Positions 2,151-62,954 of a stretch of 64,000 bases of DNA are shown piece by piece. The stretch is from Dicyema japonicum. Taxonomy: Eukaryota > Animalia > Dicyemida. Location: contig RDEW01000002.1 of assembly GCA_011109175.1 (NCBI GenBank), positions 810,676 to 874,675 of the forward strand. Direction: 5' to 3'. Each line of letters opens with the position of its first letter. Within the stretch, counting starts at the first letter, position 1. The translations under genes were made by a program, and so were the position numbers. A model generated the notes under the pieces. It saw only the letters and a list, made by a program, of their open reading frames with translations, had not been told where the DNA came from and searched no databases.

Positions 2151-3099
2151 CAGTATGTACAGATTAAAGAGTGTTGGTCAAAGTGAAAAACTTCTTTAAA
2201 TGGAGAACATGTCCTAAATATATACTGTACCCTCTAAAGCTTATACGTGACTCTCCATTGTGGTGACATTGGAAAAAAAAGTTATACTTCCTATTCTTCT
2301 AAAGGGATGGACTTTCAAGAGAGGCCTGAGTAGGAAATAATGTGGATTTTGTGCAATCGCAATATTTTGACCTATTAACTTCAATTTATGACATTAAATA
2401 ATTTAGTTAAGAAAGTAATCCGGTTATTAGAGAAAGGTAGACCGCCGTAACCCTTGCAGTACGGTTGTTCCCTCTCGGAAAATCATTAAAATGTTTCAGT
2501 TCAGATTATCTCTCCAGTTCTCCTTAGCCAAATCCATGGTGAAGATATTCCATTATGAAAACTCTTTTGCTAAAGAAGAATTGATGTCTCGTGAAGGTAG
2601 GACGTGCGATGAAACTGGAAAAGGTTGACCTACTTCTCCGCTTTCTTCTGAAGCGGAAGCCTGTAATGAATATTGGATCGATTTGGTTGCCACAAATAGA
2701 CGTTTTCTCTTGGGTTCCTTCTTGGATTAATTAGTTGTAACTGATGTGATGGGCTTACCAACTTTGTAAGCCTGGGGTTAATAAATAAAATAAAACGAGT
2801 GAGCTGGTATCATTGTTGTTTTCTTTAATCATCAATTTTGCCAGAATGCTTGGAATTCTGTGCATAATTAAAGATAACTGAAATCGAGCTATCTTTTATT
2901 TGGTAGGGAAATAGTCCGACATTGATCTCCAAATAGTCCACAAAAGATATTGCGATAATAAACACTTTATAATAAATGATAACTAATTTTAAGTCAAAAT
3001 AACCTTATTAGAGAGAGAGCTGATAATTAAGAAAAATACCACCAGACTTAGCACTTCCAGAGATCCTTTCTTCTTACTCTTCAAAGCAGATTGACGCAG

Positions 3100-10099: not shown

Positions 10100-13080
10100 A
10101 AAAACATTTATTTATAACAATAAAATCGTTCTAAAGTCCAGCGGATATGATCGAGTGGCTGTTACCTCTGACTACTGCCAGGGATATCCTTTGGAAAAGC
10201 CACTCGGTTTCCCGACGCTCCCTCGAGGCTTTGGTCAATAGACACCCAAGTGCTCTAAGGAAAAAGACCGTCTTGGGGCCAAAGACTCCGCTCGTCTCGA
10301 CGACCACTGGCTGTACATGGAAACGGTTTAGGAGGCTGCTGTATTTCTTTATTTTTGAGTTTTCATATAAACGGGCGGCCTCTCCCGCTTTCATGCCGAC
10401 CTCAAAAGTTTCGACTGGGAAAAGCTGTCAGTACAGGCAGCATCCCAAATTAAGCATTTGCCCCGAGAGAAGGGGAAGACAGTAATTCCATCGGGTCGCT
10501 TCCCATCATCCCTACTCAAGCCCGTTGGCTCTAGAATGGATGGGTATCCCGCCAACTCGAGGGCGCGCTTCACCACTTCATTTATAGCCTTGTGTCTAGC
10601 GAATCGACCTGCGCTTTTTCGACAAGAAAGGGCATGATGTCCATAGCAGTCGACCTTCCGGCCGCATCGGCACTCATGGGGTTGACAAACTTTCAATCCA
10701 AGTCTGATGGAGACTCCGGTGCGGACCGTTTCATCGTCTAGGTGAGTTCCCACGTTTCCAATGGGTAGGGCATTGATCCAAGCCCCGCTCCACTCGCATC
10801 TTGCAGTTAAAAGACAGGCTCGTCGGTGTTGGTTAGATATTTTCAAAAGCCTCTCGTATTTATCCTCGCAAACAGACTCATAAAGGTCTCTCTGCCCGAG
10901 TTGTTTGACTTTAGGGTGTACCAAATCTTCGATCTTTGACGACTCTGATGGGAGCTGGAGAATCATCATGATCAAATTCTGATTGGAGTCCAATGAGGAT
11001 TGATATGCCGGGTGTGCTAAATCAGATGGTGAGAGAATTCCGAGTCCACCAAAGCGAACGGGCAAGGTTGCTTGTTCCCATCCTTGTTCGTCGAATTCGA
11101 CATTAGTAATACGTTCGGTCGTAGACCGGAATAGGGAGTCAATCGCCCCGAGTTGTTGCATTTTCAGGTAACATGGAGCTCCTCGAAGGACGTAATTTAA
11201 TTTCTGCGTGGATAAAGCGTTTTTCATGAGAAAAAGAGAGGTATGTGCATCCAGCATCCCAAGGCGTAAAAAAGTTTTTCTTAGTTGCTGTTCTTTAGCC
11301 AACAGAGTGTCGTTAATTCCAGTTTCAGCCAGAGGGCATCCAAGTATTTCCAAATGATCCGGCTCGATTTCCGATATTTTAGGAATAATCCCCCGAAACA
11401 TTAATAGGATCCGATTCCATTCATATCGGGAGAATCCATAATTAACAATTTCGCATTTGGATGCGTTTAGCTTTAAACCAAGCGTATCCAATTGGGTTAG
11501 TAATCTCTGTAGACAGTCATATACATTGTTAGGATGACCTCCCAGGGTGCAATCATCCAAATACCACACGTTCAGCGGAGTAGTAAGGCATCTCATGACA
11601 CGGTCGACACCGAGGCAGAACAATGCCGGTCCTAGTGGGTCTCCTTGCTGAACTCCACACGACGAGGGAATGAAGTATTTCCCATGTACAAGACTGGACG
11701 GTTTTCCATACGAACAATGAACATAATTATATATAGACGGGTAATGGGTAAGACAATCTTCCAAAATTACATCGCGCCGTATGGTATTGAAGGCGTTTTT
11801 TATGTCAATCTTGAGGACCACACAAGGCATGTTCGTTCTGTTTCCAGTAAACATCCGAACGGCATGAACCGCCGCCTCACATCCACCAGGAGTACCGACC
11901 CCTACTTGGGTTGGTCGCAGTTGTTTGACAAGCATCGGAAGGATTGCTCTGCTAGCAAGTTTAGAAGCCAGTCGACGAAAAACAAACCCAACAGCAATAG
12001 GACGAATTCCTCCTCCACATTTATCAAAGGCAATTAACTTGGCGGAAAACATAATATGACGGATTGCTTCTGGTAATCTTCCGGAAAGCATTCTGTTGAT
12101 TAACCTCGTTATAGCCGATAATAGCCGAACACCAGAGTTCCCCGTATTCTGATCAATTAAGTCTTTTAGGTGTCCTGGACGGAGTCCGTCAAGTCCCCAC
12201 TGCTGCTTGGGGCGAATGAGAGGATCGCATCTTTCACGTCCCCCTCAGAAATAATCAGACTAGGTAATTCTCCAGAGCAAGTAGGGATCTGTCGTCCACT
12301 GGCGGACCAGGATGTCGTTCAACCAGTGCATCGTAGGAGTGTTCAGTTGGCTCAATTAGACGGTTATGCTCTTCTAGAGTCCTCACGGCGGCCCGGACTC
12401 CACCTTCAGATAGTTTGCGATGTATCGCTCTTCCAATCTTTGTGTTTCTGAGGCATGGTTCTCGTGGTTTGAGGGCTTGAAGGTATATTCTCGGGAGTCA
12501 CTGAACAAATTTCCAGAAGAAAACAAGCAAATATTTTCCTTTACAATAGACGTGAGCGATTCCTGATCATTCCTCTTCTGAAAGGGCATACATAGCGTGT
12601 ATGGTGCAAAGTAGAATAATCGTGTCCAATCACTGGGTCAGTCGAAGAAATTGCCCTTTCAATACAATCGTGTAAACAGTCGGCGGCAGGAACACGGGCA
12701 GCTTTTGGAATTTTGATCATGATCATTCGTGTAGATGCCAGGTTTGCAATTGATTCAAGGGTTTTCTGGTAATCTATTGGTATTCGTTCAGGTGAATTAG
12801 GTGGAGTCGATAGGGCTTTCGTCCCAGGAAGGAGGCATGCCTGGCAACATCAGTTGGTAATGGTGGTAAGGGCTTTTTTGGTCATTCCAACACATGACAT
12901 GTGAAAAACCGACGAACAAACGACACAACATATAAGCCGCTTTCTTTTGTTAATTTTATTGCAAAATTCACAAAGCTCTTCTCTTTTGTCGATCTTGTGC
13001 ATATCGCTTCTGGTTACTTCTTTCTCAATTACACCACACCACCACAACAGACAAAATATTATCAAAACTAGGAAATTTTT
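10100..13080 (-). mobile_element. CRE-clade non-LTR retrotransposon (PHD-like finger, RT, restriction-like endonuclease), frameshifted
   Basis: RT motifs GGIRPIAVG, GVQQGDPLGPALF, YLDD; CRCG...HALSC zinc knuckle; RHKAIN, RPDG and PVVVETSG RLE motifs; Cys-rich CEFC...CVVCSSVFHMSCVG segment at 12850-13065. Confidence 0.9.
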
Positions 13081-14679
13081 TTATTAAGAATTCGGTCAAA
13101 ATCAAGAAAAATACATAGTTTTTATTTTGTCTGGTAACACTCTTAAAAGAAGAAGACAACCACTTTTAAAATCTAAAGTAACCAGGATTATCCGTGGAGC
13201 TGTAGCTGTTATAGACACAGCAAAACTAAATATTCTAATAATTAATAAACGAAAATAAAGAAATTTGGTGTAATCAATATTCCTGGATATAATTCTATTC
13301 ATGTTCCATGGTGACATAATGTCCTCACTAGTACAGGTATTTTGATTCACTAAAATTAACCTATAAATACACATTCTACGTCCATCTGTCATTTCCTTTG
13401 TTCAGAACTTCCTGTTTCTGCTGTCTCTTGATTCTGCCATCACCACATTTATTATTATTAATAAGCAAACTGCAAAACAACGTTAGTAAAGTTATCTCGC
13501 TTGTGCCACCTTTTCCTGGATGTGTTTTGTTAATCGCTTCTAGTTCCTCTGTTCCTCGATAGGTCCCTCAGGTGCTCGAGATCATCTGCCGACGTCAACT
13601 TTTTCCCAATTGAAGTTAGGTCTTGATGTAGAAGGGTTGGTAGAGTAATTCGTGGTCTTCCCCGGAAAGTCGAGGAACATAATGGTGTTCTATCGCGAGA
13701 TTAGCGGTGTATTCCTATCCATTCTAAAGTACGTTTATAATTTATCTCCTTTGCTGACAAGGATGGAGATTATTTATCTTATGATAAGATGGAGATTATT
13801 TATTTACGCCAAATCAGCTTATCAGAATCTAGTTATCATTGTGATTTGAGTTGAATATATTTTAGAACATTGTCTTTATTTTATGTGGAAAACAATATTT
13901 GGAGACAGACGTATGGTTCACTTATAAGAGAATTTCCGACCCCCATTAAGTATTAGTATTCTCATGCTATCTATTTGACTATTTTAAGAACTCTAGTTTC
14001 GACAACATAGTTTTTTGCTGGAAGCGGACGGACCTATTTCTTCACCTCTATCGGTAGCGAATGCCTGTGATGGACTATTTGAGATGGATCAGACGTTCTC
14101 CCTTGGTTCCTTCATTGGATTAATTAGTTTATGACTGTTTGTGCTGGGATTACCAAATATTATAATCCTTGGGTTAGGACTTTCGTGCAATACATCTATC
14201 GGCAGGCCACTTGTGTGGAAGATAATAGATAAGAGCTGCCTCATTGAGCTCATTTCCTTGCAAATAGTAGAAGGGGATGCTTTAATTAGTTGTTTGTCTC
14301 GTTTTTAAATAAAAAATAAATAATAAATAAAAATTCACATATTAATTTCTACCAATATTGCTATCAGGCTGCTTGATAGAAATATTGGAATATTTATAAT
14401 ATAATTCAAATGGGTTTATTTTTGCCGATGTTGAAACCGTAGGACGAATGCCTGATGCTCAGAGGTTTCCATGACGTGAGGAACATTGAAATTGGATTAT
14501 ATTGTGGCGATATGCATGTTTGAACTGTGATCTAGGAATAGTGAATACTTTTGGTTAAAAATAAAATTAATTGGTTCCCATGGTTGTGTTTTCTTGTCGA
14601 ATAGTCTGAGAAAAATACATTGAAGAAACTATATCAGAACAAAGTTATCATCCCTAATAACCTACCCAGTACTTTCACT

Positions 14680-14920
14680 CTGCCTCTGCGCGTCCCTTAA
14701 GACAGATGAATCACACGACGTCACTATTGGTCTTTCCGTTCGTCTCAGCGTAGACTTGTGCTATCCTCATCGGTGTCGGACCGCAAAGGCTTCACCCGCT
14801 TCTTTTGACGACGAAGGAGTGGCTGATTCCCAAGGCATGTCGCCATTGACGGGGTATGATGCGTTCTATCGAGAAGTCTGGATTCCCGTCAATTCATGAA
14901 CCGGCAGATGTGAATGATCA
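14680..14920 (+). mobile_element. CRE-like RLE fragment
   Basis: Degenerate match to the C-terminal part of the 10.1-13.1 kb element (IGLSVRLSVDLCYPHRC...RHVAID...GFPSIHEP). Confidence 0.6.
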
Positions 14921-15271: not shown

Positions 15272-15332
15272 GGCGTCATGTGGTTCACTTTTTATGGTGG
15301 CCCTCAGTGTCGAATAACACCAAAAAGAACCA
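15272..15332 (+). ncRNA. HDV-like double-pseudoknot ribozyme candidate (copy E)
   Basis: P1 GGCGTCA/TGGCCCT (G.U at first position, one mismatch), P2 TGGTTC/GAACCA, P4 GTGT/ACAC, J4/2 CAAAAA. Confidence 0.6.
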
Positions 15333-20793: not shown

Positions 20794-20980
20794 GGCGTCA
20801 TTGGATCCACCTTATTGAGGAGACGCCAATGCCTAGTCGGTATCAAGAGGATTCAATTATTCTCTCCCCGGGGGACAATGTCGTTACCTGGAGACAAGTT
20901 CTGGAACCCTGGAACGAGTCAGGATCAAGGATTTAGTTAGTTTGGTTGCCCTTGGTCTTTGGAATAATTTTAATTTAATC
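20794..20980 (+). mobile_element. Short non-autonomous element: HDV-like RNA (20794-20854, copy C) plus LINE-like 3' tail
   Basis: P1 GGCGTC/GACGCC, P2 GGATCC/GGATTC, P4 ATGCC/GGTAT, J4/2 CAAGA; tail TGGTCTTTGGAATAA resembles LINE ends at about 35540 and 35890. Confidence 0.6.
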
Positions 20981-21772
20981 GGATTTTTCTATATGGCTTG
21001 TGTAGACACTTAAAGGTGTCGCAGCTTGCATTCTCTCAACAAAATAATTCATAATGGTCATGTAATTGCCATTTGGTTTCTCAGTGTGCTAGACTGACAT
21101 TAAGACATTCATTTTTGCTAATTAAAATCGTTATTATTGGCGCTTAATATAGAGGTGTCGCCCCTTGATCACTAAGCAGCCATTTAATCAATAGTCATGC
21201 ATTTAAATCACATAGACAATTTATTAGCAGAAATCTATATTCGAGTTCCTTGTTATGCTAAACTGTGTATAAGACAATTTACTGCTTTACAGGGATAATC
21301 GATATCATTTATTTTGATGGCAAACTTCAGATATATTCGAAATAAGTCACATTCAGTTCCCTCAGTCGTTGTGGGGCGTATTTTTTCCAAGTACCAGCCA
21401 TTATGGAAACTCTTGCGTTAGTGGAATTTTTTGTATTCCGGCAAGGACTGGGCGTCTCTTGATTAGGTGGATCAAATGACACTCTAAAAATGATAAATCC
21501 AATTATACTAATAATGCACACAAATGTCAGATGTCAGACAGCTTAATAAATCACATCAATTCTACTAATCAACAAAAAGTCTATCTTTTAACCATCAAAG
21601 CTATTAAGTCTATTATTAAAGTGCATCATAAACATAAACGGAAATAACCATCGTTACTAATGGCAACGAATGATGACGTCACAGAGATACTTCCTTACAC
21701 CAGAATTGCTATTTTAAAACATTCCTTAACAAAGCAAACTATAAGACAAAAAAATAAAAATTTATTTAAAAA

Positions 21773-40600: not shown

Positions 40601-40885
40601 AAAATGTGCCGCATAAATTGCGAAAAGATTTCCTTGTGAATTGCTATAAAATTCATTACTATATTTTCAAATAACAGACTAATCTTTTCAATGTCCTTTT
40701 GATTGAACAGGCATCAAAGTAAGTAAGATGATAATTGAACACACGCTATTATTTTATTTAAAAACTCGCAATATTAAAAAATCAAATCAAAATAACTTTT
40801 GATTTATATAATATTTTTGATTAAAAACTACATTTATAATTTTTAAAAAATTTAAAAAAAAACATGAATTTTTGACTTTATTGAC

Positions 40886-41040
40886 TATTATTAACCCTCA
40901 ATACAGAACAACATAAAAGGTAACAGGCGTCCATTCCCGGAATTTGTGGAAACTTTCCAGTGAGTGGAGGAGAGCAAATGATCCTTTTCGCGCCAGCCTG
41001 GCACTGGGAGCCACTTGAGACAGTTGGATCAGATGACGCG
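40886..41040 (-). mobile_element. Short non-autonomous element with HDV-like 5' RNA (40979-41040, copy B)
   Basis: Homologous to 50905-51136; P2 TGATCC/GGATCA, P4 GTGCCA/TGGCGC; tail GGGTTAATAA; partial flanking repeat ATTGA. Confidence 0.7.
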
Positions 41041-43121
41041 ATTGATCTTACTTAATCATTAAAGAACTGTATTTGAAGAAAAACTTTACTGCTATAATAC
41101 AAAATAATTTAAAACTCTAATTAATGTAAAGTCAAATTCTATTGATTTCTATTTACTTTATTCTAAAATCTACACTTTCCTTAAGCTCACACCAAGGAGA
41201 CAATAACTGACTTGCAGTAAGTCTAACTGTATAATTGAATTCTTAGTAATTCTCCTGGTTTTCGTTCATCATACGAAGGACAAACCTTATAATCGCTCTC
41301 CTCGTCTTTCCCAGCATCAAGATAATTCTCTCCACGAAAAACCACTTCACACATCCATATAAGAGAGGAGCCGTATAGTAGCTTGGTCAAACACTACCAC
41401 TACTTTATTTTTCCATCAAAAAAATTTAGCAAATTATTGGGAGGATCATTTTATGAGCTTATGACGAATCTCTTACTTATATGAGAAGGTTAATTCAATT
41501 TATAATCGATAAAATATTTTAGAGGATTAAATTTGTTTTTCAATTTACTTTTCCCATCGACGCGAATTCCTGGGTCGTTTAGGGAATCGGATTTCTACAC
41601 GCACAAGAGATCTCCGTGAGCACTGCTGGCTAGTTAAGCGAATCACCTTCCTGGGAGAGAATATCTACGGATTCAGAGCAGCTACTGTATGATCCTCTGA
41701 CTTAAGTATTAAGCTGCTTACAAATATCATTTATTTTATAAAACTTCCTTCACCTTGTTAGAATATGTCATAATAGCTTATTGATTTCATTAACAGCTAT
41801 TTTTGAAACCACAAAATACCAATAAAACTCAAAAACCACAAACCCCAAGCAACGTCTCTTCAAAGACATTGGCCTTACAATCATTAAAGGCAACTCTGAG
41901 TGCCTTCTTTCCAGAGCGTTCAAGGCAGTAATAATCATGGACAGCAAACTTTCAATAAGACTCACCCAGAGCGTTCAAGGGCTGTAATAATCATGGACAG
42001 AATCTCCCAATAAGAGACTCTTCTGAATTACGTCATTTCAAAATCACTATATAAGTGCAGGATCAGTGACATCATACATTAGACGTAGTCACTCATTTAA
42101 GAACTATTGATTCACTACGACCTTGATATAACGATTTGATCATGAATCGGGGTAATAGAAGAGGCTAAGCCCTTGAATAGTTTTAAAATTTATAAATTCA
42201 CAGAATCTGCCGTTGAAACTAAAACTTGGATTCTCGTCAAGAAATTTTCCTTTCAGAAAGGCAATCAAATTTGCGGTTTAACGTCTGATTTGACAAACAG
42301 TGCAATGATTAAGACTTATAAAATTATTAGACGGCAGTTACAATGTTTCCACATTAAATGGATTTGTTCTCCAAGCAGCACAGTGTTTTTAACAGTGATC
42401 CCATACTTAGCAAGCTTTCCTCCAATTCAGAAGTCAATTTGTGACCTTAACCTTAGATGAGATATATTGGGGACAAGAATGTTTCGCACGATGAAAAAAA
42501 GTTCCGATTTCTGCAGGACTGTAGAGCCGGCCTCGTAGTTCTAGTAACACGATGGTTTAACTACCAATTTTAAGGTTTTTATGACTTTTGGAGTATCAAT
42601 TACATTTGTGGAGGACAAAGTCAGCAACAGCATTCAGTTTATGCATTTCGACTCCACACAGAATAAAGTGAATGTCTTCTTATTGCAGATGAACTTAACT
42701 GCGAGGTGTATTTTTAACGGAACAAACGTTTTGTGCCACGCTTGCATTGATACGGAGACTCTCTCTGGTTATGGGTATTTGGAGCCTGATTCAATCTATA
42801 ATTCATGCATTTAATAATTTTATGATTGAATACATGAACTTCCATTTTGATATTAAATGTCTTAAATTGTCGGTTTTCCTGTGGTACCTACTCTTTGCTC
42901 AGGGGGTAGTGGATGATGCTGTCGCTTGTGTTACATGCCGTGGGTTCTATTCTCACGCAGCTACCTGTTTGTCGATGGATTTCCTCTCAGTTCTTTGCCT
43001 AGAGGTGTTGGTGGAGTGTTTGGATAGGTGCGTATCACTCAGAGGGTTGGGGGTTGTATGATCAGATGTTAGTCGACCCTCAACCTCTTTCCAGTGTTTT
43101 TAAATTAAATCGAATTTTAGA

Positions 43122-43184
43122 GGCGTCACGGGATTCACCAACTGAGGACACGCCCAATGCCTAGTTGGCATCCAAAGAGAATCT
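43122..43184 (+). ncRNA. HDV-like ribozyme candidate (copy D)
   Basis: P1 GGCGT/ACGCC, P2 GGATTC/GAATCT, P4 ATGCC/GGCAT, J4/2 CCAAAGA. Confidence 0.55.
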
Positions 43185-50000: not shown

Positions 50001-50904
50001 TACCTTTCACAATCCGAAAGGCATCCAAAATTTTTTGTTAAATTAAATTAAAATTAATTCCAAACCGAAAAAACTAACTAAGTAATCCCGACGAATTGAA
50101 TCATGACTCTCATCTTTGCTCGGTGTTGATCTTTAGAGCCTACACAAGTTCGCTGCGGGCGAGCACTTCCTTCTTGGCATTGGTTCATATTAATGGGAGT
50201 TTACTGTACTTTTATTTAAAATTTAAATAAAAGTAATTTTACTTTGTAATTTAAATTTACTTATTTTATGCAATTTAATGAAAATTTACAATCGTAACTA
50301 ACAAAATTTACTGACTTGGACAAATCTATCGGTGGGGTCGGGAGTGTTTCCTCAAGGTCCTCTTAGACGACAATGGGTATTTCCTATGAAGATGCATTGT
50401 CCCTTATCTTTTTTTGTCATAAAGGTCTACACGGACTAAAGCCACTCCTCATAAAACAAACATTGTAGCAAATGTGGATGATGTGGATTTCATTTCGAAT
50501 AATAAGGAAGCACTTATTGCATTATTGGAGGCAGGATTATCAAAATGACAGAGTGGCTCCTAACGGTAGGCCGGTCAAAAATGAAATCACGGAACCCATG
50601 AGAGAGGAAGAGGAGAAAATGAGAACTGGTGCAAACTCAAAGGGCTTACTCCTTGGAATCACGAAGAAATTACAAAACAAAAGCTAATACCTTCCTAACG
50701 AAGTAAAAGAAACCTGGCTATTTTATAAAAAAACTTGTGAACGAAAGAATCCGATTTTTCGTAAAGCCTGTACTCTTGTACAACTCTGGTCGAATTTACT
50801 GAGTTGCAACTCATCCGCAAAAAATGCTGCCTTAGTAGATATTAAAACATCATTCAAAAAACCACCTAAAATTGATTTTTCGAAAAGTACCTGTAGACTC
50901 TAAT

Positions 50905-51136
50905 TTAATTTATTAACCCCGGATACACCGAGAAAGAAGTTAAAGTAAACAACTAATTATGTGTATCCAGTATCCACTTCTACAGAAACAGAGTCCATCC
51001 GAATCAACATAAAGGGTAAAATACGTCCATATTTTCAGTTGTGGAAACCCCTCCAGTGGAGTGGGGAGAGCAAATGATCCTTTTTCGTGCCGGCCTGGCA
51101 CTGGGCGTCACCTAGACAGGTGGATCACATGACGCC
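50905..51136 (-). mobile_element. 232-bp non-autonomous retroelement: HDV-like RNA (51075-51136, copy A) plus GGGGTTAATAAA tail
   Basis: Perfect 8-bp TSD ACTCTAAT at 50897-50904 and 51137-51144; P1 GGCGTC/GACGCC, P2 TGATCC/GGATCA, P3 ACC/GGT, P4 GTGCC/GGCAC. Confidence 0.85.
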
Positions 51137-51199
51137 ACTCTAATAGGAAGAGAGAGGAGAGACAGACAAGCAAGCATAAACTTCAACCAATTAGCCACG

Positions 51200-51440
51200 A
51201 AGCACCACATGCGCCACGCGGCTAAGTGATTACCCTGTAGACTCTAAGCGTCAGGGTCGTCCCCGTCTTTTAATTGTTTCCCCACTCTCCGAAGGTCTCG
51301 ATCCAGCGTAACCGGGAGAGTACTTCTCGGGTGCCCCCTGAAACGAGGTCCGTCAGCTTCGAAATAGTCCTCCGTGACAGTATTTGCTGGTGCCTCCAAA
51401 TCCATGCTTATAATGTGTCCGAATAGTCTCACCTGCATGC
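51200..51440 (-). mobile_element. RTE-like 3' fragment
   Basis: RLFGHIISMDLEAPAN...FRGHPRSTLPVTLDRDL, paralogous to 5830-6018. Confidence 0.8.
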
Positions 51441-61059: not shown

Positions 61060-62804
61060 ACCTCTCAAGACCTCTTTGAACCTTCAACCTTGACTTCCTG
61101 AAAGCCAAATAAATAAACCCAGGCTTTGTGATCAACAATGAAGGTCTTTGAGCTATTTTTTCAGATAATGAATCATAGGATGATAACCACGTTTACTTTG
61201 AGTATATTTTAGTAGCCAAAGGAATCACGTTTTTACAGAGTTCCTCGATGTTCTGCTCCTTTTGGGACAAGTCGAGACGAGTCTGAGTAATGGAAACGAC
61301 GCGAGTTGAGTTTGCTAACTTTTAGACCACAGGATGAGGGGAGGGAAACAAAAACTATATTTTTGAATTACTAAGTTTGTTGTGATTTGGCGGATCTCAG
61401 TTGAACGATGTGAAGTTAATCGATGTTTTTTCCCGCTAATTTCGTTCGCCGAGTAGACCCATGAGTGCTGAACGTCAAAGGTTATTACAAGAATTTTGAC
61501 TGTGCTCTTGCATGAGATTTCTTTTACAATCAGGACCAGTCCAATAGTTAGCCAATCAAAAACTATTGTCTGTACTCGTGGTCATTGAATTATTGTTTAA
61601 TCATTCATTCTGGTGGTCGTGCATATGCTACAATTGTTCGGTAGCTCTCAGAACGCTTTTTCCTTTGTATGCTGAGATGACATCGTCCGTAAGAGAGAGA
61701 TAATGTTTTCGCTTCGGTATTGATTGGTAGATCATACAGGAAGATTAAACAGTTACGGTGACAAGGGGATATTGCTATGCTTCTGTTACCACTCTTCGTC
61801 CTGTTAGAAAATTTGCGAGTCATCGTTTAAATTCCTTGGGGATTAGGGACCATAGATCTTTCGAATCAAGATTTTTCTGGGTATTGAGTCAAAAGCCTTG
61901 TGAATATCAATAGAGCAAATCAGAGTTTTGTGTCACTAGGCTTTGAGAAAGTGATTAGATGTCGACAACATCTTGGCTTAGGTACATTGGTCTGTGCCAA
62001 GGAGGAAACTCTTTTGGCTTCCCATGGAAGTGTGTTAATTTTCATGTTGTGGAAGTTGTTTCGATTGATCGAGAGGTTATATAACTGAGTTAGAGCTATG
62101 AGGGCACAATTTCTTCACGACAGTTGCTAGAATTCCATCTGGTCTAGTGAAGTAAATTTTTTCTGTGTTTTAATGGCATTTTAATCTTGTGGGTGAGAAA
62201 GTGATTAGGTTGAGACATCATCTTGGTTTCAGGCAAGACGGTCGAATGAGTTAGTAGAGGACTGGGATGTCCTTTTGTGGATGTATTGTTTAATGGCCAC
62301 ATATGGTTTTACTAAAAGGTTTCACTGCATTATCAAGTGATTTGTAACTTTCTGCGCCTAAGACCGTGGGGATGCTAAAGTTAAGTCTGGTGAGGTAACA
62401 TTGTCATTAGCTCTGCAAGGTGTTCTTGTATTTCTTCGGTAGTCAGTAATGATCATAGGTTTTCCTGTGATCAGAGTATAGACAGGTGCCGTAGTTTTTT
62501 TAAACCAGGTCGATGGACTCCATTCGTCATTATTAAAATTCCAAGGTATTCTAATGGGGATGAGAACTCGTGATGGCAAGGGGTCGTCATGTGAAAAATT
62601 AAGAGTCAATTACTTTTCCTTCCACTCCGTTGACATTCAGTTAAATAATAGAGATAGATTTTGATAGTCGGATTTGGTTTGACGTCACAAGACATGATCA
62701 GTAAGGTTTTCACCAGGTTAGGTCAATAGCAGCAACAAAAGAGTATTACTGTGAAGTTAAGTCCACTGTTGACTTTAGCAGAAACAGTGAACCACATGAC
62801 CCCC
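61060..62804 (-). mobile_element. Ingi/Vingi-like LINE remnant with partial 5' ribozyme motif and decayed 2A-like motif
   Basis: 5' GGGGGTCATGTGGTTCAC matches the start of 15272; LLIMSCDVKPNPT at about 62667-62704; APE motif TSPDLTLAS; RT motif VIPKEF...TRKFSNR. Confidence 0.6.
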
Positions 62805-62954
62805 GCTAAATTCCAATTAGTAAATTATTGTGAGTAAATAATGAGAAATTATAATTCATTAATTATTTATAAAATTATATTAAATATTTATTTATTTGAT
62901 TAAATTAATAAATTATTTTCAAAATAAAGTATAATTCTTTTGTGGTCACTACTT

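What the first reader, a model, noticed from the sequence alone, without database searches (positions are those of the whole stretch)
50897..51144. 232-bp ribozyme-headed non-autonomous retroelement whose TSD abuts the predicted self-cleavage site
Seen: on the minus strand the element reads GGCGTC-ATG-TGATCC-ACC-TGTCTA-GGT-GACGCC-CA-GTGCC-AGGCC-GGCAC-GAAAAA-GGATCA. This is the P1-P2-P3-P3'-P1'-P4-P2' strand order of HDV-like ribozymes. It is followed by about 150 non-coding nt and the GGGGTTAATAAA tail shared with local LINEs. A perfect 8-bp TSD (ACTCTAAT) sits exactly against the first G of P1. A homologous shorter copy lies at 40886-41040. Established: HDV-like ribozymes cleave 5' of the first P1 nucleotide and define the 5' ends of R2, RTE and L1Tc/Ingi elements, and Ingi/Vingi elements spawn internally deleted non-autonomous families. 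Inference: this is a SINE-like family whose 5' end is made by self-cleavage and which is mobilised by a local Ingi/Vingi-like LINE.
Basis: partly seen in the sequence, partly recalled or inferred. Interest (0 to 1): 0.85.

Follow-up and report, generated by a model that had tools for sequence, protein, structure and literature searches.

The report
SINE with internal delta-like RNA knot
The 232-base unit is the back three quarters of a roughly 330-base, very abundant short repeat (SINE) that carries a hepatitis-delta-ribozyme-shaped RNA fold copied from its helper LINE. The fold lies in the middle of the repeat, and the genome shows no sign that it cuts the repeat's front end.

Summary
The quoted motif is real and sits exactly where stated. 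The claimed 5' boundary and 8-bp TSD are wrong.

- **Boundary.** In all 30 best genomic copies, homology runs upstream of the 'P1' G, by about 86 nt in most, to a conserved head.
- **True TSD.** It is 14 bp (TTAGAGTCTACAGG) at 51234-51247 and 50890-50903, so the element is about 330 bp.
- **5' ends genome-wide.** Only 1 of 470 exact P1-P3 words lacks the upstream bases. An arbitrary internal control site gives 1 in about 560.
- **Helper LINE.** This 2.95-kb element (N-terminal 2A peptide, APE, RT) carries the same module near its 5' end. At least 26 of 29 copies keep an 11-13-nt leader before P1.
- **The fold is real.** P2 and P4 covary across at least 8 variants.
- **Catalytic position.** SINE-A has G where the LINE has the J4/2 C. 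No Rfam HDV-type model matches.

Verdict: a LINE-dependent SINE, closest to published LP-SINEs, with an internal HDV-shaped module that does not define its end.

This scan has already noted the same module many times on other DNA of this genome, with the same conclusion.

The parts
51234..51247 (-). 5' target-site duplication (TTAGAGTCTACAGG)
   Evidence: Perfect 14-mer repeated at 50890-50903.
51223..51233 (-). Variable 11-nt leader between the TSD and the conserved head
   Evidence: Other copies have unrelated leaders of 6-25 nt at this position.
51137..51222 (-). Conserved SINE head plus pyrimidine-rich linker.
   Evidence: Present in 26 of 29 copies sampled with a query that had no head. 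The core CGTGGCGCCATGTGGT matches the LINE 5' end at 15 of 16 positions. No tRNA and no Rfam match.
51075..51136 (-). 62-nt HDV-shaped double-pseudoknot module. P1 51131-51136 pairs with 51104-51109; P2 51122-51127 with 51075-51080; P3 51119-51121 with 51110-51112; P4 51097-51101 with 51087-51091; J4/2 is 51081-51086 (GAAAAA).
   Evidence: Sequence. Covariation of P2 and P4 across variants.
50966..51074 (-). Non-coding body. Its first ~20 nt (TTTGCTCTCCCCAC...) continue the LINE 5'-UTR homology.
   Evidence: The SINE region q85-166, which runs from 2 nt before P1 to 18 nt past the module, is 75% identical to LINE copy L104, positions 34-114. Alignment of copies.
50909..50965 (-). LINE-derived 3' tail ending in GGGGTTAATAAA, which contains AATAAA
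   Evidence: Homologous to the 3' end of the 2.95-kb LINE. AATAAA is present in 35 of 42 copies.
50904..50908 (-). A/T-rich tail extension (TTAAA)
   Evidence: Variable (TAAA)n-like extension in other copies.
50890..50903 (-). 3' target-site duplication
40886..41040 (-). Old, diverged, internally shorter relative that lacks the head and begins at or near P1
   Evidence: 86% identity over 99 nt to SINE positions 88-184. No closer relative in the genome; best match 84%.
15272..15332 (+). The same module at the 5' end of a degenerate copy of the helper LINE, followed by a 2A-like peptide and an APE domain
   Evidence: The family's 5' ends are.

Best explanation
Window 50890-51247 (minus strand) is one copy of an abundant SINE of about 330 bp, called SINE-A here.

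Anatomy, 5' to 3':
- a short variable leader
- a conserved head of about 86 nt, whose core repeats the first ~16 nt of the helper LINE's 5' end
- a complete 62-nt module with HDV-ribozyme helix order, copied from a LINE 5' UTR
- a non-coding body
- a LINE-derived 3' tail with AATAAA and (TAAA)n

Shown: the anatomy, the TSDs, the relation to the LINE, and the RNA fold through compensatory changes.

Inferred:
- The element is transcribed from its LINE-like head. RNA polymerase II is more likely than III, because T4 runs lie inside every copy.
- It is copied by the LINE's target-primed reverse transcription through the shared tail.
- The module is kept as a structural cis element of the RNA, for example for LINE protein or ribosome docking, or as part of the promoter region. 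It is not kept as an end-defining ribozyme.
- The RNAs that were copied into the genome were uncut.
- The family carries G at the J4/2 position where the LINE has the candidate catalytic C.
For: - **Copy number.** 1880 first-look candidates; the 40 copies that were scored (lower bound) are 93-96% identical to the window copy.
- **Upstream homology.** Seen in all 30 fetched copies. In a sample taken with a query that had no head, 26 of 29 carry the head and none starts at P1.
- **TSDs.** Median 10 bp, up to 26 bp, flanking head-to-tail units.
- **5'-end census.** GGCGTCATGTGATCCACC occurs 470 times, and only 1 has both preceding bases changed. The control site gives 559 and 1.
- **LINE.** It is 2.95 kb with 2A, APE and RT, and its tail is homologous to the SINE tail. 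Its module shows compensatory P2 and P4 changes against SINE-A, and 26 of 29 copies keep the CGT leader. Of 44 exact LINE-type words, none lacks the preceding GT.
- **Covariation.** P2 is 97% paired with 4 of 6 pairs changed on both sides. P4 is 98% paired with 4 of 5. No shuffle of 1000 reaches the observed pairing or covariation score of either helix.
- **Catalytic position.** J4/2 starts with G in every SINE-A copy examined and with C in the LINE. The P4 closing pair covaries between G-C and A-U, so the neighbouring C is paired.
- **Transcription signals.** T4 runs in 42 of 42 copies and AATAAA in 35 of 42.
- **Head.** No tRNA and no Rfam match.
Against: - No RNA data exist for this organism in the run index, so transcription, the polymerase and the absence of cleavage are unobserved.
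- An alternative register (C-GAA, as in HDV and CPEB3) could supply a catalytic C if the P4 closing pair opens.
- Rare copies do begin at P1: L041, the 40886-41040 copy, and possibly LINE copies L073 and L080.
- The helices were parsed by hand with the structure in mind, which favours pairing.
- The head-to-LINE similarity is short (15 of 16; shuffle p about 0.014).
Confidence: 0.78

Rival explanations
1. One reading: a 232-bp non-autonomous element whose 5' end is created by HDV-like self-cleavage just 5' of the P1 G, with the TSD abutting that site.
For: The helix order is right. An 8-mer repeat flanks the 232 bp in this copy. One genomic copy (L041) and the old copy at 40886-41040 do begin at P1.
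Against: The left 8-mer is conserved element sequence. All 30 copies extend upstream. A 14-bp TSD lies further out. Starts at P1 are 1 of 470, the same as the control's 1 in about 560. J4/2 has no C.
Confidence: 0.03
2. The SINE-A module is an active ribozyme that cuts the head off the body after transcription. Cut RNAs are rarely reverse-transcribed, for instance because the cap or head is needed, so the genome keeps almost only uncut copies.
For: The fold is intact in most copies and kept by covariation. A C-G-A-A register resembling HDV and CPEB3 J4/2 exists if the P4 closing pair opens. Rare P1-start copies exist.
Against: A cut RNA would still carry the LINE-recognised tail, yet starts at P1 are not enriched. 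The P4 closing pair covaries, so that C is paired. The position aligned with the LINE's J4/2 C is G. No Rfam HDV-type model matches.
Confidence: 0.12
3. A classical pol III SINE with a tRNA-, 5S- or 7SL-derived head. On this view the HDV-like resemblance is a chance feature of a conserved central domain.
For: The head contains A-box-like (TGGCGCC.TGTGG) and B-box-like (GGTTGAAGT) strings by eye. Central conserved domains are common in SINEs (PMC4758252).
Against: ARAGORN and Rfam find no small-RNA relative. Every full-length copy has internal T4 runs. Double-sided compensatory changes in the pseudoknot helix P2 and in P4 are not expected by chance. The head core matches the LINE 5' end.
Confidence: 0.05

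Closest known systems
L1Tc/NARTc Pr77 hallmark with the L1TcRz HDV-like ribozyme (trypanosomatids; PMC3185411, PMC3383444, PMC4035085)
   Same: An HDV-type fold at the front of a 2A-bearing APE LINE, shared with its non-autonomous partners. The same ~70-nt region is proposed to be both promoter and RNA structure.
   Different: In L1Tc the ribozyme's first nucleotide is the element's +1, and cleavage was shown in vitro. Here the LINE keeps an 11-13-nt leader and the SINE about 97 nt upstream. No activity data exist, and SINE-A has G at the J4/2 C position.
R2 SIDEs and R2/R1 hybrid SIDEs (Eickbush and Eickbush 2012, PMC3414825)
   Same: Non-autonomous elements built from a LINE 5' ribozyme region plus a LINE 3' end, mobilised in trans.
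   Different: SIDEs are rDNA-specific, and their ribozyme makes the precise 5' end by cutting a 28S cotranscript. SINE-A is dispersed, has an extra head, and its copies are uncut.
LP-SINEs of molluscs (Matetovici et al. 2016, PMC4758252, section 10)
   Same: A SINE whose head comes from a ~70-bp LINE 5' domain rather than a small RNA. Variable TSDs. Terminal short repeats preceded by a poly(A) signal. Suggested pol II transcription.
   Different: Sequence relationship to the published LP domain could not be tested, because no sequences are held. Here the LINE 5' unit occurs twice (partial head plus complete internal module) and is shown to be a covarying pseudoknot.
HDV and CPEB3 ribozymes, and HDV-like ribozymes of R2, RTE and other LINEs (own knowledge: Webb 2009, Eickbush 2010, Ruminski 2011)
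   Same: Nested double-pseudoknot order P1-P2-P3-P3'-P1'-P4-P4'-P2', a 3-bp P3, a purine-rich J4/2, and G as the first P1 nucleotide.
   Different: No Rfam model matches. P1 is 6 bp. The base pair at the foot of P1 is G-C in SINE-A (G-U in the LINE). The candidate catalytic C is absent in SINE-A. P1.1 is only possible as U-A/G-C at a position that is not conserved.

Membership tests
HDV-like self-cleaving ribozymes | Nested double-pseudoknot helix order with complementary P1, P2, P3 and P4 | tested here: met
   P2 and P4 are supported by double-sided compensatory changes, and no shuffle of 1000 reaches the observed pairing or covariation score.
HDV-like self-cleaving ribozymes | Unpaired catalytic cytosine at the start of J4/2 (the C75 equivalent) | tested here: not met
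   SINE-A J4/2 is GAAAAA in the window copy and in the SINE-A copies examined. The LINE and several variants have C there. The adjacent C is the covarying closing pair of P4.
HDV-like self-cleaving ribozymes | G at +1 forming a G-U wobble at the foot of P1 | tested here: inconclusive
   G is present. The pair is G-C in SINE-A and G-U in the LINE family.
HDV-like self-cleaving ribozymes | Two-base-pair P1.1 between L3 and J1/4 | tested here: inconclusive
   CA in J1/4 can pair with a UG in L3 in most variants, but the UG position in L3 shifts between families.
HDV-like self-cleaving ribozymes | Self-cleavage 5' of the first P1 nucleotide | not testable with these tools
   The genomic footprint was tested instead. 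Copies starting at P1 are 1 of 470, against 1 in about 560 at a control site, and 0 of 44 for the LINE-type word. No RNA runs are available.
HDV-like self-cleaving ribozymes | Match to a curated Rfam HDV-type covariance model | tested here: not met
   No match at gathering score or at E up to 10, for the SINE or for the LINE copies. These models cannot encode pseudoknots, so this is weak evidence.
Classical pol III SINE | Head derived from tRNA, 5S or 7SL RNA | tested here: not met
   ARAGORN finds none. Rfam finds none at E up to 10.
Classical pol III SINE | No internal T4+ terminator runs | tested here: not met
   42 of 42 full-length copies contain a run of at least four T.
LINE-dependent SINE (general) | Short, non-coding, high-copy, variable-length TSDs, and a 3' tail shared with a LINE | tested here: met
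LP-SINE (SINE with a LINE-promoter head) | Head homologous to the 5' end of a LINE | tested here: inconclusive
   15 of 16 identity of the head core to the LINE 5' end, at the same terminal position; shuffle p about 0.014. nhmmer E 0.2-10.
LP-SINE (SINE with a LINE-promoter head) | Homology to the published ~70-bp LP domain (Nimb-17_LMi, I-3_DR, RTE-9_CPB, Lsa_2) | not testable with these tools
   No sequences or supplements are held.
Ingi/Vingi-clade LINE as helper | RT phylogeny placing the LINE in the Ingi/Vingi clade | not tested
   Only the architecture was seen: N-terminal 2A-like peptide, APE, RT with YADD, 2.95 kb. The Atlas look-up gives generic APE clusters.

The most novel reading that the evidence does not exclude
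The LINE versions of the module, which have the J4/2 C and a G-U at the foot of P1, are working or recently working HDV-type ribozymes. The SINE families inherited the knot and keep it, by compensatory evolution, after losing the catalytic C. That would be a natural case of a self-cleaving ribozyme exapted into a purely structural cis element needed for LINE-mediated mobilisation or for LINE-type promoter function.
Probability: 0.25. Interest if true: 0.6.

Novelty: new variant of a known kind. Interest (0 to 1): 0.35.

Why it matters
HDV-like ribozymes are known to trim the 5' ends of several LINE families and of their deletion derivatives. Here the same type of fold is maintained by compensatory change in a LINE and in thousands of SINE copies, yet in both families the copied RNAs kept the bases that cleavage would remove.

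If this holds, the knot has a job other than end-trimming, such as RNP assembly, translation or ribosome docking, or promoter function. It would also give a structural meaning to the unexplained ~70-bp LINE-5' domain reported in mollusc LP-SINEs.

Tried and rejected
- **Rfam.** Searched at gathering score and at E up to 10 on the SINE and on LINE copies. No HDV-type hit; only chance-level bacterial families.
- **Nested MFE folding of the 71 nt.** z = -1.49, not informative because the pseudoknot is not modelled.
- **A loose helix-order descriptor.** Over about 290 kb it gave many AT-rich chance hits, so it cannot be used as evidence.
- **MAFFT alignment A1.** It misaligned the 3' strand of P2. 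The pair counts come from a hand-parsed script instead.
- **RNA evidence.** The look-up of sequencing runs found no RNA holder.
- **Automatic locus cutting.** Small regions were fetched by hand afterwards.
- **TSDs of three ambiguous LINE copies.** L073 (ATGAA) and L080 (imperfect CAGA..CG.T) may start at P1. L102 has no tail at the expected distance. Unresolved.
- **Supplements of PMC4758252.** Not held.
- **Organism and LINE clade.** Not determined. The Atlas look-up was uninformative.

Full report
**Observation**

The strands pair as P1 (6 bp), P2 (6), P3 (3) and P4 (5), in the HDV order. The tail word GGGGTTAATAA occurs 8 times in the window at up to 1 mismatch, against 1.8 expected. The second copy is homologous: 41039-40944 is 86% identical over 99 nt.

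**Boundary and TSD**

A search of the window's own assembly (67.5 Mb held) gave 1880 first-look candidates, and the 40 that were scored are 93-96% identical. When the 30 fetched copies are aligned with their flanks, homology does not stop at the 'P1' G.

- The 8-mer ATTAGAGT just upstream of P1 is exact in 21 of 30 copies and within two mismatches in all 30, although each copy has a different 3' flank.
- Homology then continues through a pyrimidine-rich linker to a conserved head that begins GCCGCGTGGCGCCATGTGG, about 86 nt upstream of P1.
- A TSD script on 47 full-length copies finds direct repeats with a median of 10 bp and up to 26 bp. They flank head-to-tail units, with an unrelated leader of 6-25 nt between the TSD and the head.
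- For the window copy the TSD is the perfect 14-mer TTAGAGTCTACAGG, at 51234-51247 and 50890-50903.

**Do copies ever start at P1?**

- A second sample of 29 loci was drawn with the head-less 40870-41100 query, so it is unbiased for the head. Of these, 26 carry the head, the other three end elsewhere upstream, and none starts at P1.
- Genome-wide, the exact word GGCGTCATGTGATCCACC occurs 470 times. Only one occurrence has both preceding bases different from the consensus GT. That one, L041, is a copy beginning at the P1 G with a TSD of about 5 bp.
- At an arbitrary internal control site, 559 copies have the consensus and 1 does not.

Starts at P1 are therefore no more frequent than random 5' truncation. 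Truncated copies occur at scattered positions, about 15, 26, 38, 60, 79 and 128 and further into the element.

**The helper LINE**

That region is the 5' end of a degenerate LINE on the plus strand. The family gave 153 first-look candidates, with the best copies 90% identical to the window copy.

- It is about 2.95 kb long: two copies are 97.8% identical over 2.95 kb.
- It encodes an N-terminal 2A-like peptide (..SGDIEQNPGP), an APE domain and an RT with YADD.
- Its 3' end (CACTTAATTAGTTGG ... CGGGGTTATTAAAT) is homologous to the SINE-A tail.
- Its 5' end carries the same module, with different but complementary P2 (TGGTTC/GAACCA) and P4 (GTGTA/TACAC), a G-U at the foot of P1, and CAAAAA as J4/2.
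- The start codon lies about 37 nt downstream of the module.
- Of 29 LINE 5' ends examined, at least 26 keep a subfamily-specific leader of 11-13 nt ending in CGT before the P1 G.
- The exact LINE-type word is preceded by GT in 44 places and never by two other bases.
- Three copies (L073, L080, L102) are ambiguous, and two of them might begin at P1.

**Is the fold real?**

nhmmer found many diverged variants of the module in the roughly 290 kb held. In 12 hand-parsed variants that represent at least 8 lineages:

| Helix | Cells paired | Pairs changed on both sides | Shuffles of 1000 reaching the observed pairing or covariation score |
|---|---|---|---|
| P2 | 97% | 4 of 6 | 0 |
| P4 | 98% | 4 of 5 | 0 |
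| P1 | 85% | 3 of 6 | 20 (pairing), 6 (covariation) |

- P3 never changes on both sides.
- Sliding the 3' partner by 1-3 nt lowers pairing in P2, P3 and P4 to 15-57%.
- G-U pairs on this strand (for example U5-G in P1) would be A-C mismatches on the complement, so the structure belongs to the sense RNA.
- Caveat: the helices were parsed by hand with the structure in mind.

**Is it a ribozyme here?**

- The P4 closing pair covaries between G-C and A-U, so the C that ends P4' is paired.
- The next base, aligned with the LINE's J4/2 C, is G in every SINE-A copy examined and in one other variant.
- By established knowledge of HDV C75 mutants, this predicts loss of activity.
- No Rfam HDV-type model matches either the SINE or the LINE version.
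- No RNA run holds the sequence, so cleavage cannot be observed.

**What the SINE is**

- The head has no tRNA or Rfam relative.
- Its core matches the LINE's first bases at 15 of 16 positions and at the same terminal position.
- All 42 full-length copies contain T4 runs, and 35 of 42 end in AATAAA.

This fits the 'LP-SINE' idea of Matetovici et al. 2016 (PMC4758252, section 10). They describe mollusc SINEs with a ~70-bp LINE-5'-derived head, TSDs, terminal repeats after a poly(A) signal, and possibly pol II transcription. Whether their LP domain is this pseudoknot could not be tested. Other analogues are L1Tc/NARTc (PMC3185411, PMC3383444, PMC4035085) and the R2 SIDEs (PMC3414825). In both of those the ribozyme does define the 5' end.

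**Verdict**

The element is a LINE-dependent SINE of about 330 bp with an internal, covarying, HDV-shaped module inherited from LINE 5' UTRs. The genome shows that the RNAs which were copied had not been cut there.

Earlier follow-ups in this scan reached the same conclusion for the same module on other DNA of this genome. My tests were run independently on this family. The organism was not identified, and the earlier guess of a cephalopod was not tested.

Noticed in passing
window 2518-2793 (+): A second SINE-like family of about 275 bp (775 first-look candidates genome-wide, copies about 79% identical). It ends in the same GGGGTTAATAAATAAA tail but has an unrelated body.
   Followed up: partly
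window 10391-12091 (-): A 566-aa ORF with an RVT_1 domain (E 1e-19). It belongs to another LINE on the opposite strand from the 15272 element. No GGGGTTAATAA tail lies nearby.
   Followed up: partly
window 43122-43184 (+), 20794-20854 (+), 21404-21483 (-), 14643-14722 (-), about 62777-62809 (-): Further diverged copies of the same pseudoknot module, from other repeat families. Several have compensatory P2 and P4 changes and C at the start of J4/2.
   Followed up: partly
L001-L071, 5' junctions of SINE-A copies: Between the TSD and the conserved head, each copy carries an unrelated leader of 6-25 nt, often ending in ATA. Possible causes are transcription starting upstream in different source copies, or untemplated or template-switch additions. 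Unexplained.
   Followed up: partly
L005 and L006 (G000:C90:162573 and C90:125556): Two SINE-A copies with identical sequence and identical flanks, 37 kb apart on one contig. This is a segmental duplication, not two insertions.
   Followed up: no
L014 1740-2200: This SINE-A copy is inserted in a tandem satellite of TTAGGG-like units (GGGTTTTAAGGGTTATGG...). That gives an apparent 26-bp TSD.
   Followed up: no
L073 (G000:C323:1576600-1576820): The 5' junction of this LINE copy shows a partial duplication (ACGTCATG, AAA, then AGCGTCATG), and the leader is missing. It looks like a template switch at or near the P1 position.
   Followed up: partly
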